Part shown: positions 10,846 to 34,259 of the stretch, piece by piece
Position numbering within the stretch: position 1 is the stretch's first letter
How the letters are laid out: every line of letters begins with the position of its first letter
IMG/VR virus record: IMGVR_UViG_3300010430_000003
Coordinates: 146,327-210,326 of that record
Reading direction: 5' to 3' (one strand)
DNA: 64,000 nucleotides
Notes under the pieces: model-generated
Databases searched by the model: none
Told to the model about the DNA's origin: nothing
Seen by the model: only the letters and a program-made list of their open reading frames with translations
Program-made: the position numbers and the translations under genes

Positions 10846-10919
10846 TGGATATCAACTGAGGGTTTCGAACCTTCATCCTCCCCATCACAGGGCACTTTAC
10901 CACTTAAGTTAAGTTGATA
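10846..10919 (-). tRNA. tRNA-His(GTG)-like RNA with shortened anticodon arm (pseudo-tRNA or mimic)
   Basis: TATCAACT/AGTTGATA acceptor, D-arm ACTT-AAGTGGTA-AAGT, loop CTGTGAT with only a 2-3 bp stem, T-arm GAAGG-TTCGAAA-CCCTC, then TCCA. Confidence 0.6.
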
Positions 10920-11006
10920 GACGGCAGGCAATCTTGTATCCTAGACAACGCCTGCCTAAGTTTAGTGTCTTTCAGCACTTCGCCACGTTTAAGTTGCATC
11001 ATTAGA

Positions 11007-11093
11007 TTAAAATCGTGCGTCCTTCCTTTAGACGACAGGAACATAAGAAAGAAAGTTCCCGGTGGGATTCGAACCCACATACATTGATTATTT
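11007..11093 (-). ncRNA. permuted tRNA-mimic module B (YrlA-like topology)
   Basis: T-arm GTGGG-TTCGAAT-CCCAC, then CGGGAAC, 12-nt loop, GTTCCTG (7-bp pair incl. one G-U), TC, D-arm GTC-TAAAGGAAG-GAC; flanks AATC/GATT can pair. Confidence 0.75.
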
Positions 11094-11161
11094 TGATGAA
11101 ACATTTGATGCGAAGATAACACTTGGTTGCTCAATTTTGGAGTAAGAATTTCATGTTAATA

Positions 11162-11249
11162 AAGAACTGACTGCTGCCTCTACCAATTGGGCTACCCGCC
11201 CCCAATTTATGGGCGGAGATGGATTCGAACCACCACTGACACAATCTTT
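11162..11249 (-). ncRNA. permuted tRNA-mimic module A (YrlA-like topology)
   Basis: T-arm GGTGG-TTCGAAT-CCATC, then TCCGCCC, 9-nt loop, GGGCGGG (7-bp pair incl. one G-U), TA, D-arm GCCCAATTGGTAGAGGC; flanks GATTGT/GCAGTC and AAAGA/TCTTT can pair. Confidence 0.8.
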
Positions 11250-11276
11250 AGTTGACAAGAAACTTGAGCTTGCTAT

Positions 11277-11310
11277 GTGCCTGCACCGATCTTTCGGTGG
11301 TCTTAGGCAC
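11277..11310 (-). other. GC-rich stem-loop immediately after the stop of 11318-12058
   Basis: GTGCCT...CACCGA-AAGA-TCGGTG...AGGCAC; no U-tract, so not a classic intrinsic terminator. Confidence 0.65.
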
Positions 11311-11317
11311 ACTCCAT

Positions 11318-12058
11318 TTATTGTCCGAAGACAAAGTTGAAAAGTTTATCACCAATCTTCTTGGTTTCCACTTCTGTTTCATTTGCATTGCAGCGAGCTT
11401 CTTTAACTGCAATTCGCAGTTTTGCAATCTTTTCAGTCCATGCTCGCTTTTGATTTTGTGTAATCCCTCCATGTTGCTGAATGGCAGTCCATACACCTTG
11501 GATCACATCTTCAGTGATAAGTTGTGTTTGCGCCGGATGTTCGGGAGTTGCATCGTAAAGGACAATTGCTCTCTGTACCTTTTTGGTGGAGTTTCGATGT
11601 TCCGGGTTGGAAACAAAGATCTTTTCATTGCTTGAGGATGGTGTCCATTCTCGATCTGTTCCCAACACAGGTGCGTGTCGAACAAATGTTTCAAGGTCTT
11701 CAAATTGCTTCTCAAGGAATAGCAATAGAGATACAGGACAATCGTGTACCAACGTCTCGCCTTCTACAACGATATCAGAAGAAGCCTTTACGTTACCATA
11801 GTCCTTAGACGCTGTGAGGTCAATAAGGCGCACTGTTGCCTCTTGAAAGTCTTCTACGGCGTCTTGCACCGTCATTTGAACCCTTGCTACTTCATCTGGC
11901 AATTGTTCGCCTTCTTCGTCCTTTGGTTCATATTTCCGAACCATGCCAGTGAACAGGGCTTCCTTTTGGAGTTTCTTATACAGTTCAGTCCTTGTCCTTT
12001 CAAGGCGTTTCTTTTCTGAACTTTCGACGGCTACAATTTGATGCAGTTTGCTTGACAT
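11318..12058 (-). CDS. conserved uncharacterised coiled-coil protein (MxKLxQIxAVE family)
   Basis: Motifs KLHQIVAVE, YEPKDEEGEQLP, LLFLEKQ, KKVQRAIVLYDATPEHPAQ match a family I recall from bacteria and phages; accession not verified. Confidence 0.75.
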   Translation of the reverse strand: MSSKLHQIVAVESSEKKRLERTRTELYKKLQKEALFTGMVRKYEPKDEEGEQLPDEVARVQMTVQDAVEDFQEATVRLIDLTASKDYGNVKASSDIVVEGETLVHDCPVSLLLFLEKQFEDLETFVRHAPVLGTDREWTPSSSNEKIFVSNPEHRNSTKKVQRAIVLYDATPEHPAQTQLITEDVIQGVWTAIQQHGGITQNQKRAWTEKIAKLRIAVKEARCNANETEVETKKIGDKLFNFVFGQ

Positions 12059-32807: not shown

Positions 32808-33038
32808 TCATCCCGCTCCTCTTTTAATTTCTCTTAAATCCAAAAGACACACCCACAAAAGAAAATTCTCTATACAATATTCTCCAAAAACAATCAATTC
32901 TTCATGTTCGTAAGATTCTATCACAGATTGTTTGGGGTCTATTTCCCATATTTTGGGGTTATTAATATCAACAGTGAAGTTTTGATTATATTGAAGAACA
33001 AAACTAGCCTTCACCATTTTATTAACAAATGAATTCAT
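32808..33038 (-). CDS. MNIN-family micro-ORF (KAxFVxQ subgroup)
   Basis: MNSFVNKMVKASFVLQY. Confidence 0.7.
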   Translation of the reverse strand: MNSFVNKMVKASFVLQYNQNFTVDINNPKIWEIDPKQSVIESYEHEELIVFGEYCIENFLLWVCLLDLREIKRGAG

Positions 33039-33247
33039 TTATGTTCATTGGAGAATGATAAGTAGTAGTAGTTTACATCTTCTATACATCCAGAAATAAC
33101 ATGTTTTGAATATTCAAGTATAGATGCCATACTTGAATATAGCGCTACGGAATAGTGCTTTCCTGGTATGGACGTCCATAAGAACCGACCATGTTGACGA
33201 ACAAAGCCAGCTTTAATCAGATTATTTATTGTTGAATGTGAATTCAT
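33035..33247 (-). CDS. MNIN-family micro-ORF (KAxFVxQ subgroup)
   Basis: MNSHSTINNLIKAGFVRQH; the A of ATG is the tRNA discriminator base. Confidence 0.7.
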   Translation of the reverse strand: MNSHSTINNLIKAGFVRQHGRFLWTSIPGKHYSVALYSSMASILEYSKHVISGCIEDVNYYYLSFSNEHK

Positions 33248-33330
33248 AGCGGGAGAGGGATTCGAACCCTCGAAGCCTTAACGGCAAAAGGTTATGAGCC
33301 TTTTCACTTTAACCACTTGTATATCCCGCA
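33247..33330 (-). tRNA. tRNA with CAT anticodon (Met or Ile2) and long variable arm
   Basis: Acceptor TGCGGGA/TCCCGCT (U1-U72 mismatch), D-loop AAGTGGTTAAA, AAAGG-CTCATAA-CCTTT, V-arm GCC-GTTAA-GGC, GAGGG-TTCGAAT-CCCTC; no encoded CCA. Confidence 0.85.
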
Positions 33331-33335
33331 GCAAA

Positions 33336-33685
33336 TTTATGATTAAATGCTCCGATTCTTCAACCACCACTTATGCCAATCTCCATCCTTGCGGGGAGGA
33401 GCAACCTTTAAGGTTGAGACAATCAGCTTAAGTCTTCTAACGGTACCTATCCCCAAGGTTCAGGCCGATCACTCGATCTGCACGCACCTCACTTAATCAT
33501 AAAAGCAAATCCTACCCCGAAGTCTCTCACCAATTAATAATCAACCGCACGAAAATTATTAATGACTTCGATCTCTCAACCTATGGAGTATCATAGGTCA
33601 CCAGCTTTGTATCATTCAAGAGCGAAAGGACAACGACATGAATGAATGAATTTTGTCTGATTGTTTGAACACCCGCAGCACAAGT
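33336..33685 (-). ncRNA. candidate ~350-nt structured non-coding RNA
   Basis: No ORF; 14-bp stem 33336-33349/33490-33503, nested stems CGAAGTC/GACTTCG and ATTAATAAT/ATTATTAAT, hairpins ACCTATG/CATAGGT, CAACCT/AGGTTG, and a GCAA tetraloop. Confidence 0.6.
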
Positions 33686-33692
33686 TATTAAC

Positions 33693-33720
33693 ATTATAGT
33701 ATATGTTGCAATTTTCTCAA
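33693..33720 (-). promoter_or_regulatory. sigma70-like promoter TTGAGA-N16-TATAAT for the ncRNA-tRNA transcript
   Basis: Read directly. Confidence 0.65.
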
Positions 33721-33727
33721 GAGAAAT

Positions 33728-33928
33728 TTATTCATCAATCCAACCTGCTTGTGAAGCACACCATGTCTTGACCATTTCTCTTTCTCGATAACCTAATCTA
33801 TCCCAAATAGCATCAAGTTCATCAAGCAACTTTTCTACTTTAGGACGATGCGTAGCTGATAGCGGTTTCTCTTTGCACAACTCTTGTGCCTGTAAGAAAC
33901 GCTCTTTGTAAATCTCAATTGTTTCCAT
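33728..33928 (-). CDS. hypothetical protein
   Basis: 66-aa ORF with GGAG RBS. Confidence 0.55.
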   Translation of the reverse strand: METIEIYKERFLQAQELCKEKPLSATHRPKVEKLLDELDAIWDRLGYREREMVKTWCASQAGWIDE

Positions 33929-33971
33929 GGATTCCCTCCGCTATGAAATCATATAAACTTTAGTCAGAAAA

Positions 33972-34259
33972 TTAAGCTAAATATAAAAAGTAGTATGCGA
34001 TATTGGCACAATGGTATATCGCAAGAATCCCATACAAGAAATTCAAAAAGAAAAGTGTTTTCTTAGCATCACGGAAATGTTTCCACAAGATTCCGCACAG
34101 GATTGCCATTACAATTAACTTGAATGGTAAAAAGATACCAATATCGTATGCGAATTTCATTAAGGGGTTTAATTCCATACCAGAACCGAACTTAGTCAGG
34201 ATCCAGTACGTAACAAATGCATCGAAAGCGTTAAGAATATATAACAGAATTATGGACAT
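33972..34259 (-). CDS. small membrane protein, DUF5658-like
   Basis: LNAFDAFVTYWIL...ELNPLM plus 3 TM segments. Confidence 0.65.
   Translation of the reverse strand: MSIILLYILNAFDAFVTYWILTKFGSGMELNPLMKFAYDIGIFLPFKLIVMAILCGILWKHFRDAKKTLFFLNFLYGILAIYHCANIAYYFLYLA

What the first reader, a model, noticed from the sequence alone, without database searches (positions are those of the whole stretch)
33336..33685. ~350-nt ORF-free, densely base-paired region between a promoter and the tRNA: candidate novel ncRNA
Seen: a promoter at 33693-33720, then a region with two multi-stem domains. One has nested CGAAGTC/GACTTCG (33518-33524/33564-33570) and ATTAATAAT/ATTATTAAT stems plus an ACCTATG/CATAGGT hairpin. 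The other is closed by a 14-bp stem (33336-33349/33490-33503) and holds GATC-GAGT-GATC, CAACCT/AGGTTG and a GCAA-tetraloop hairpin. The 9-mer TGCTGCGGG occurs both at its 5' end and at the tRNA 5' end. The size matches tmRNA or RNase P RNA, but I find none of their signature motifs. Established: large phage ncRNAs such as GOLLD and ROOL often lie next to tRNAs.
Basis: partly seen in the sequence, partly recalled or inferred. Interest (0 to 1): 0.65.

Follow-up and report, generated by a model that had tools for sequence, protein, structure and literature searches.

The report
Patchwork leader RNA before phage tRNA
The 350 non-coding bases between a promoter and an odd tRNA in this marine-sediment jumbo phage are two separate RNA modules, a conserved three-hairpin leader and an inserted, decayed tRNA-like element, and they match no known RNA family and have no known function.

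Summary
The described features are real, on the minus strand. A strong sigma-70-type promoter (33720..33693) is followed by about 350 ORF-free bases and then a long-variable-arm tRNA(CAU) at 33330..33247.

It is not tmRNA, RNase P RNA, GOLLD, ROOL, a group I intron or a known ribozyme. ARAGORN and Rfam found nothing even at E<=10.

Relatives from four phage lineages show that the region is modular.
- **Domain 1 (33665..33504)** is 87.5% identical to relative L002, while four-fold synonymous sites of neighbouring genes are only 47-60% identical. Its helices carry compensatory changes. Only a roughly 45-nt hairpin motif (here called D1b) also survives in the more distant L013.
- **Domain 2 (33503..33336)** is absent from L002. 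It is a clean 162-nt insert with a 14-bp terminal stem and a 6-nt flanking repeat. Its core is a diverged, truncated copy of a tRNA-like element (here called X) that follows the same tRNA in L002 and L003.
- **The repeated 9-mer** is not kept exactly in L002, and a repeat of that length is common by chance.

Best reading: a composite leader or stable RNA co-transcribed with the tRNA and released by RNase P. The family is new and small. There is no expression data. Interest is moderate.

The parts
33693..33720 (-). Sigma-70-type promoter, TTGAGA-16-TATAAT
   Evidence: 11 of 12 consensus matches. The same arrangement is kept in L002 (TTGAAA-16-TATAAT) and L003 (TTGAAA-17-TATTAT).
33672..33680 (-). 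Promoter-side copy of the 9-mer UGCUGCGGG
   Evidence: It is only partly kept in L002 (AUUGAGG). A repeat of 9 or more occurs in 31% of shuffles.
33504..33665 (-). Domain 1, the conserved structured leader: P1 (33661-33657 / 33604-33600) enclosing H1 (33650-33643 / 33618-33611), then H2 (33599-33592 / 33585-33578), then P3 enclosing H3
   Evidence: 140 of 160 aligned bases are identical to L002, against 47-60% identity at four-fold synonymous sites of four neighbouring genes. Helix table with compensatory and one-sided changes.
33508..33583 (-). D1b core hairpin motif: UUGAGAnAUCGRAGUC, a variable apex, then UGAGAGACUUCGGG. P3 is 33571-33564 / 33524-33517. The optional apex hairpin H3 is 33563-33555 / 33541-33533.
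   Evidence: Conserved in the window, L002 and L013/L014. A-U becomes G.U in P3, which fits only RNA of this strand. H3 is replaced by a 7-nt loop in L013. Covariance model R1 scores 98, 99 and 49 bits. Single copy in the genome.
33504..33509 (-). Left copy of the direct repeat UUUGCU flanking domain 2
33336..33503 (-). Domain 2: a 168-nt module closed by a 14-bp stem (33503-33490 / 33349-33336). It is absent from L002.
   Evidence: Clean indel against L002. MFE z = -2.31. One G.U pair in the closing stem on this strand only. No second copy in the genome and none in genome contigs.
33354..33436 (-). X-like core inside domain 2: a diverged copy of the tRNA-like element X of L002 and L003, lacking the 3' half of the T-arm and the acceptor 3' strand
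   Evidence: Local alignment to X of L003 gives z = 7.5. It beats all 2,794 windows of the phage's own genome under three scoring schemes. It is the second-best nhmmer hit in the genome, E = 1.3.
33317..33367 (-). Second, weak D1b-like site formed by the 3' tail of domain 2 and the leader/tRNA junction
   Evidence: Model R1 gives 17 bits, E 0.098 over 132 kb and 4e-4 within the locus. MFE folding does not favour this pairing.
33330..33335 (-). Right copy of the direct repeat UUUGCU; its last base is tRNA position 1
33247..33330 (-). 84-nt tRNA with anticodon CAU, a long variable arm, a 3-bp D stem, a 6-bp anticodon stem and a U1xU72 mismatch
   Evidence: ARAGORN. Rfam tRNA 48.9 bits. 96% and 90% identical in L002 and L003, with a G-C to A-U change in the variable-arm stem.

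Best explanation
The region is the composite 5' part of a non-coding transcription unit.

**Proposed course of events**
- A host-type promoter starts a transcript of about 440 nt or more.
- The transcript runs through domain 1, domain 2 and the unusual tRNA(CAU).
- Cleavage by host RNase P at the tRNA 5' end (33330/33331) frees the tRNA and a 5' RNA of about 350 nt.
- The perfect 14-bp stem of domain 2 is a plausible second cut site, for example for RNase III. A cut there would separate a domain 1 RNA of about 180 nt from domain 2.

**Roles of the two domains**
- Domain 1 is the selected, functional part. It is a three-hairpin RNA whose invariant core is the D1b hairpin, with conserved single-stranded UGAGA flanks. 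It most likely acts as a stable small RNA or a protein-binding or processing element tied to the tRNA.
- Domain 2 is an optional, lineage-specific module. It arose by local insertion or duplication of a tRNA-like element of the X family that has lost its T-arm and acceptor closure. It may be a remnant.

**What is shown and what is inferred**
- Shown: the promoter, the absence of coding, the conservation, the compensatory pairs, the indel and the D2-X similarity.
- Inferred: transcription, the RNase P and RNase III cuts, and any trans-acting function.
For: - The promoter is conserved in three lineages.
- All frames are closed, and the indels against L002 are not multiples of three.
- Domain 1 is 87.5% identical to L002, against 47-60% at synonymous sites.
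- H3 has two double compensatory changes. H2 has a paired 2-bp lengthening. The G.U changes fit this strand only.
- The D1b motif is kept in L013/L014 in front of a different, normal tRNA(CAU).
- Domain 2 is missing from L002 at an exact junction, bounded by a 14-bp stem and a 6-nt repeat.
- The D2-X similarity is significant against shuffles and against the phage's own genome.
- X itself has six compensatory pairs and a tRNA-like 3' domain.
- Domain 2 and the tRNA fold independently in the MFE model.
- Established knowledge, from memory: phage T4 co-transcribes two stable RNAs of unknown function with its tRNAs, and RNase P releases them.
Against: - There is no expression data. All six public runs that hold the sequence are DNA.
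- Only four lineages exist, two for most of domain 1, so the covariation rests on very few sequences.
- The domain 1 MFE is no better than shuffles.
- All available copies of domain 2 are identical, so its structure is untested by comparison.
- Whether domain 2 was inserted in the window's lineage or deleted in L002 cannot be decided.
- No target, partner protein or ligand was found.
Confidence: 0.5

Rival explanations
1. The region is purely a cis-acting tRNA leader. Domain 1 and the D1b hairpin serve only to guide, time or protect maturation of the downstream tRNA (5' processing, stability, folding). The leader is degraded after RNase P cleavage and has no life of its own.
For: D1b lies 18-25 nt upstream of a tRNA(CAU) in L002 and L013, even though the two tRNAs have different bodies. 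There is one copy per genome, always at this tRNA. No antisense targets were found in the phage.
Against: In the window, 168 nt of domain 2 separate D1b from the tRNA, and L003 has the same tRNA without D1b. Close coupling is therefore not required. 160 nt of strongly conserved, structured sequence is far more than known bacterial tRNA leaders need.
Confidence: 0.25
2. Domain 2 is a miniature transposable element (MITE-like), or otherwise selfish or decaying DNA with no RNA function. The reader's 'second domain' would then be an insertion scar rather than part of an ncRNA.
For: The 14-nt terminal inverted repeat sits exactly at the indel borders, flanked by a 6-nt direct repeat. Domain 2 is absent from L002 and L013. 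Its tRNA-like core is truncated.
Against: There is no second copy in the 210-kb phage. The inverted-repeat pattern has no match in 185,579 species genomes, and the interior has none in viral contigs. The single mismatch in the terminal repeat is G.U on the transcribed strand and A.C on the other. The ends of domain 2 resemble the halves of the neighbouring D1b motif, which points to local duplication. A deletion in L002 by slippage between the 6-nt repeats explains the data equally well.
Confidence: 0.2
3. The region is one large catalytic or scaffolding RNA of about 350 nt: a divergent tmRNA, RNase P RNA, group I intron, self-cleaving ribozyme or GOLLD/ROOL-like RNA. The repeated 9-mer would let the 5' end pair with the tRNA 3' acceptor strand.
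For: The size and the position next to a tRNA fit. In the window, the 5' copy of the 9-mer could form 5 pairs with the acceptor 3' strand.
Against: ARAGORN finds no tmRNA. No Rfam family scores at E<=10. The two domains are separable in relatives. The 5' copy in L002 cannot form that helix. The whole-region MFE gives z = 0.07.
Confidence: 0.03
4. The region codes for small peptides, for example the 7-codon AUG...UGA frame in the H1 loop that is kept in both the window and L002, or the 37-codon frame 33694..33581.
For: Start and stop of the 7-codon frame are kept in the window (MSLSFRS) and L002 (MSSSFGS), and three of five differences are at third positions. A gene caller called the 37-aa frame on L005 and L007.
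Against: There is no Shine-Dalgarno sequence. The AUG and UGA lie beside and in the arms of H1, so structure alone keeps them. The 37-aa frame starts inside the -10 box, upstream of any transcript start, and is broken in L002 by 2-nt and 14-nt indels.
Confidence: 0.02

Closest known systems
Stable RNAs of the phage T4 tRNA cluster (species 1 and 2, rnaC/rnaD); recalled from memory, not tested here
   Same: They are non-coding RNAs of 100-200 nt with unknown function. They are co-transcribed with phage tRNAs and released by the tRNA-processing enzymes.
   Different: The host, phage group and structures are unrelated as far as can be told. Here the RNA lies 5' of a single odd tRNA and is modular between relatives.
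tRNA-like elements: YrlA / bacterial Y RNA-like (RF02553; PMC4201824) and mascRNA-type tRNA mimics (RF01684)
   Same: The parent family of domain 2 (element X in L002 and L003) has an acceptor stem, a T-arm with a canonical UUCGAAU loop and two further hairpins. It aligns end to end, but weakly, to the tRNA and mascRNA models. The same phage carries a YrlA-like RNA at 11261..11147 (24.2 bits).
   Different: Domain 2 has lost the 3' half of the T-arm and the acceptor closure, so it cannot be a tRNA mimic as it stands. Neither domain scores against YrlA. The phage has no Ro/TROVE protein.
GOLLD and ROOL, large phage ncRNAs often found next to tRNAs
   Same: Phage-borne, non-coding and adjacent to a tRNA.
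   Different: GOLLD and ROOL are 500-800 nt single conserved architectures. Here there are two separable modules of about 165 nt each, and neither hits Rfam at E<=10.
MITEs and hairpin-bounded intervening sequences
   Same: Domain 2 has terminal inverted repeats at the exact borders of an indel and a short flanking direct repeat. A long terminal stem could be cut out by RNase III, as with rRNA intervening sequences.
   Different: It is single-copy everywhere that was searched. Its content derives from a neighbouring RNA family rather than from a transposon.

Membership tests
tmRNA | tRNA-like domain formed by the 5' and 3' ends, plus a tag reading frame with a resume codon; detected by ARAGORN or Rfam RF00023 and its clan | tested here: not met
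   ARAGORN reports only the tRNA. There is no tmRNA-clan match at E<=10 over 33000-34000.
RNase P RNA | Conserved P4 helix (CR-I and CR-V sequences) and a match to the Rfam bacterial, archaeal or type-T models | tested here: not met
   No match at E<=10. The candidate AAGUC/GACUU pairing is the local P3 hairpin, which has a variable apex.
GOLLD / ROOL | Match to RF01998 or RF03087; a single conserved architecture of 500 nt or more | tested here: not met
   No Rfam match. The region splits into separable modules in relatives.
Group I intron and known self-cleaving ribozymes (hammerhead, twister, pistol, hatchet, HDV-like, hairpin) | Conserved catalytic core recognised by the Rfam models. For hammerhead this is CUGANGA...GAAA. 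| tested here: not met
   No Rfam match at E<=10. The CUGAUGA seen in L002 reads CUGGUGA in the window and is not followed by GAAA after the stem.
YrlA / Y RNA-like | Long terminal stem plus a tRNA-like module (T-arm, closed acceptor stem, D-arm); usually with a Ro/TROVE protein | tested here: not met
   Not met for 33336-33685, which has no match. A different locus of the window (11261..11147) does match, but below the gathering score. The phage has no TROVE protein.
MITE (for domain 2) | Terminal inverted repeats and a target-site duplication at the borders of an insertion | tested here: met
   14-nt inverted repeat (13 of 14 as DNA) and a 6-nt direct repeat at the exact indel borders against L002.
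MITE (for domain 2) | Several dispersed copies in the genome or in host genomes | tested here: not met
   One copy in the 210-kb genome. No match in genome contigs by the inverted-repeat pattern and none in viral contigs by an interior 21-mer.
X-type tRNA-like element (defined here from L002 and L003) | Sequence similarity to the X core | tested here: met
   z = 7.5. Best of 2,794 genome windows. nhmmer rank 2, E = 1.3.
X-type tRNA-like element (defined here from L002 and L003) | 7-bp acceptor stem stacked on a T-arm with a UUCGAAU loop | tested here: not met
   Domain 2 keeps only the 5' half of the T-arm (GGUGGUUGAAGAAUC) and has no acceptor 3' strand.
Stable RNA co-transcribed with phage tRNAs (T4-like) | Transcribed with the tRNA and released by RNase P as a stable species | not testable with these tools
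   A conserved promoter lies upstream and no terminator lies before the tRNA. No RNA run holds the sequence.

The most novel reading that the evidence does not exclude
This small clade of marine-sediment jumbo phages carries a previously undescribed set of RNA modules: the D1b hairpin, the X-type tRNA-like element, and their derivatives such as domain 2. These modules duplicate and insert at the borders of an unusual, initiator-like, long-variable-arm tRNA(CAU). Domain 1 would be a new class of phage small RNA that works together with that tRNA, for example in taking over or protecting translation initiation.
Probability: 0.15. Interest if true: 0.65.

Novelty: new variant of a known kind. Interest (0 to 1): 0.4.

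Why it matters
Phage tRNA clusters often carry unexplained non-coding RNAs. This locus provides three things.
- A clearly selected structured RNA (domain 1 with the D1b motif) that belongs to no known family.
- Evidence that tRNA-like RNA modules are shuffled around a tRNA gene within one phage clade.
- A link to an atypical tRNA(CAU).

If domain 1 proves to be a stable RNA, it would be a tractable new phage sRNA. If not, the locus still shows how "large ncRNA candidates" can be patchworks of a leader, an insertion and remnants. The practical limits are the tiny family (four lineages), the unknown host and the lack of expression data.

Tried and rejected
**Searches for relatives that found nothing**
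- INPHARED phages by blastn.
- The search for related loci with three neighbouring proteins in IMG/VR.
- Exact or degenerate pattern scans for the D1b motif, the tRNA, the domain 2 interior, the domain 2 inverted repeat and the X T-arm region, in viral contigs, metagenome contigs and genome contigs. The only hit was a contig of the same phage (L010).
- The genome search cannot draw relatives for a virus record and does not hold the Logan contigs.

**Relatives that did not help**
- L011 ends before the locus.
- L012 and L015-L020 have other genes at this place.

**Reads**
- Only DNA contigs identical to the window were laid. There were no variants, joints or RNA.

**Ideas considered and dropped**
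- Alternative genetic code: all frames are closed by mixed stops.
- Hammerhead: the core is not conserved.
- Leader peptide: no ribosome-binding site, and the frame lies in a hairpin loop.
- The 5' 9-mer pairing with the tRNA 3' strand to give a tmRNA-like end: not possible in L002.
- D1b as a terminator: no U-tract follows it.
- D1b as a general signal upstream of tRNAs: single copy, and absent from the five other tRNAs of the genome.
- Antisense targets in the phage for five conserved unpaired segments: only the self-matches.
- Homology of the L003 module M3 to domain 1, domain 2 or X: z<2.

Full report
**Context**

The window is bases 146327-210326 of a 210,326-bp virus record with direct terminal repeats, estimated complete. 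It is about 35% G+C. Six public DNA runs hold it, all labelled marine sediment metagenome; no RNA run does. The genes around the finding run on the minus strand, so the region is read on that strand.

**Checking the observation**

- A promoter-like site TTGAGA-16-TATAAT lies at 33720..33693, with 11 of 12 matches.
- An 84-nt tRNA with anticodon CAU lies at 33330..33247.
- The roughly 350 nt between them are closed in all six frames by a mixture of TAA, TAG and TGA. No single stop reassignment opens a frame.

Thermodynamics alone does not mark the region out. The whole stretch gives z = 0.07 against dinucleotide shuffles on the transcribed strand. Domain 1 alone gives +0.68 and domain 2 alone -2.31. 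A direct repeat of 9 or more appears in 31% of shuffles of the 450 nt.

**Known families**

ARAGORN finds no tmRNA. cmscan against Rfam 15 gives only the tRNA, both at gathering thresholds over the whole window and at E<=10 over 33000-34000 with lax filters. This excludes recognisable tmRNA, RNase P RNA, group I and II introns, GOLLD, ROOL, YrlA, 6S RNA and the known self-cleaving ribozymes.

**Relatives**

DNA and pattern searches in phage, viral, metagenome and genome collections found nothing beyond the same phage. Word-based protein searches with three flanking genes did find relatives, and their contigs were fetched.
- L002: 73% identity in the upstream 66-aa protein.
- L003: 67% identity in the same protein.
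- L005-L009: identical over the region.
- L013/L014: 79% identity in the 273-aa neighbour.
- More distant phages (L012, L015-L020): no tRNA or non-coding island at this place.

The locus therefore lies in a variable island of a small phage clade.

**Domain 1 (33665..33504)**

L002 has the same promoter and a colinear domain 1.
- Over the core, 140 of 160 aligned bases are identical (87.5%). Four-fold synonymous sites of the four neighbouring genes are only 47-60% identical between the same two phages. Domain 1 is therefore under purifying selection.
- It is not coding. The indels against L002 are 2 and 14 nt long, and all frames carry stops.

The differences respect the following helices.
- P1, AUCAG/CUGGU: U.G becomes U-A.
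- H1: a U x U mismatch becomes A-U.
- H2: lengthened by two pairs on both arms.
- P3, UCGAAGUC/GACUUCGG: A-U becomes G.U in both L002 and L013. This would be A.C on the other strand, so the pairing is RNA of this strand.
- H3: two A-U pairs become G-C by changes on both sides, while its loop is conserved.

In L013/L014 only the P3 hairpin and its flanks survive. The motif reads UUGAGAnAUCGRAGUC, a 7-nt loop in place of H3, then UGAGAGACUUCGGG. It sits about 20 nt upstream of a normal 74-nt tRNA(CAU).

A covariance model of this motif (R1) scores 98, 99 and 49 bits on the three lineages. The motif is single-copy in the genome and is not found at the other five tRNAs. It has no match in the viral or genome collections. 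L003 lacks it and instead has a 95-nt module closed by a 10-bp stem (z = -2.64) directly before the tRNA.

**Domain 2 (33503..33336)**

In L002 domain 1 runs straight into the tRNA. The window differs by exactly one insert. The insert has a 14-nt terminal inverted repeat at its very ends, 13 of 14 as DNA, with the odd pair G.U on the minus strand. It is flanked by the direct repeat UUUGCU, whose last base is tRNA position 1.

There is no second copy in the phage. The inverted-repeat pattern has no match in 185,579 species genomes, and the interior has none in viral contigs.

The core of domain 2 (33436..33354) is a diverged copy of an element here called X. X follows the same tRNA in L002 (4527-4712) and L003 (4439-4625).
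- The local alignment to the L003 copy has z = 7.5.
- It scores above all 2,794 windows of the phage's own genome under three scoring schemes, though by narrow margins.
- An nhmmer profile of X ranks domain 2 second in the genome. The E-value is 1.3, so it is not significant on its own.

X itself is 82% identical between L002 and L003 and has six compensatory pairs. Its 3' 66 nt form a tRNA-like fold: a 7-bp acceptor stem, two hairpins and a T-arm with a UUCGAAU loop. This fold aligns end to end, but weakly, to the Rfam tRNA and mascRNA models.

Domain 2 keeps the 5' half of that T-arm but lacks the other half and the acceptor 3' strand. It is closed by its own 14-bp stem instead.

Model R1 also finds a weak second D1b-like site at 33367..33317 (17 bits). 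It is made of the 3' tail of domain 2 and the leader/tRNA junction that carries the 9-mer. This hints that the locus grew by local duplication of its own modules. MFE folding, however, keeps domain 2 and the tRNA cloverleaf separate. Whether domain 2 was gained in the window's lineage or lost in L002 by slippage between the 6-nt repeats cannot be decided.

**The 9-mer**

The promoter-side copy is only partly kept in L002 (AUUGAGG against AUUGCGGG at the tRNA) and could not form an acceptor-like helix there. Oddly, the two bases before UG are GC in both copies in the window and AU in both copies in L002. This is unexplained (note 5).

**Interpretation**

The best-supported reading is a non-coding transcription unit.
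- Promoter, then domain 1, then an optional module, then the tRNA.
- RNase P cleavage at the tRNA 5' end would release the leader.
- The long stem of domain 2 is a plausible RNase III site.
- Domain 1, above all D1b with its conserved unpaired UGAGA flanks, is the functional element. It is either a stable small RNA or a protein-binding or processing signal.
- Domain 2 is a rearranged relic or variant of a tRNA-like element.

Transcription, the processing cuts and any function are inferences. No RNA data exist for this phage, and no antisense target was found in the phage.

The nearest known analogues are the following.
- The two stable RNAs of the T4 tRNA cluster (recalled from memory).
- tRNA-like RNAs such as YrlA (PMC4201824, found).

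Membership in any described family was tested and not met.

**Verdict**

There is a real, selected, unclassified structured RNA. The 350 nt are a patchwork rather than one large RNA, and the tmRNA/RNase P size analogy and the 9-mer carry little weight. Novelty: a new variant of the known kind 'non-coding RNAs linked to phage tRNAs'. Interest: 0.4.

Noticed in passing
window 33247-33330 (-); L002 4440-4524; L003 4354-4437: The tRNA(CAU) is atypical. It has a long variable arm (3-bp stem, with a G-C to A-U covariation in L003), a 3-bp D stem, a 6-bp anticodon stem and a mismatch or wobble at pair 1-72. A11-U24 is present, which is reminiscent of bacterial initiator tRNA. No canonical Met, fMet or Ile2 tRNA has a long variable arm. 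Relative L013 has a normal 74-nt tRNA(CAU) at the same place.
   Followed up: partly
window 10850-11325 (-): A cluster of tRNA pieces lies in permuted order: T-arm plus acceptor 3' strand, a short loop, then acceptor 5' strand plus D-arm. This occurs twice. The first unit (11261..11147) aligns end to end to Rfam YrlA (Y RNA-like) at 24.2 bits, E = 0.011, below the gathering score. A tRNA found only by Rfam (10918..10850) has a shortened anticodon arm. The phage has no Ro/TROVE protein.
   Followed up: partly
L002 4527-4712; L003 4439-4625: Element X is a conserved RNA of about 190 nt directly after the tRNA(CAU). Its 3' domain is tRNA-like, with a 4-nt GAUC loop where the anticodon loop would be. 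It has six compensatory pairs between the two phages and matches no Rfam family at E<=1 over the whole loci.
   Followed up: partly
L013 3100-3515 (-): At least 420 nt upstream of the D1b motif have no called gene up to the contig end. They are unrelated in sequence to domain 1, domain 2 or X (z<2) and may hold another non-coding RNA.
   Followed up: no
window 33035-33247 (-) and 32808-33038 (-): Two small paralogous ORFs (70 and 76 aa, both starting MNS...) follow the tRNA. The ATG of the first overlaps the tRNA 3' end and has no ribosome-binding site. The set of small ORFs differs between near-identical contigs L005-L008.
   Followed up: no
L011 2787-5219: In a more distant relative the PhoH-like gene is 810 aa and carries a LAGLIDADG domain between two PhoH hits. 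This suggests an intein or a homing-endonuclease insertion.
   Followed up: no
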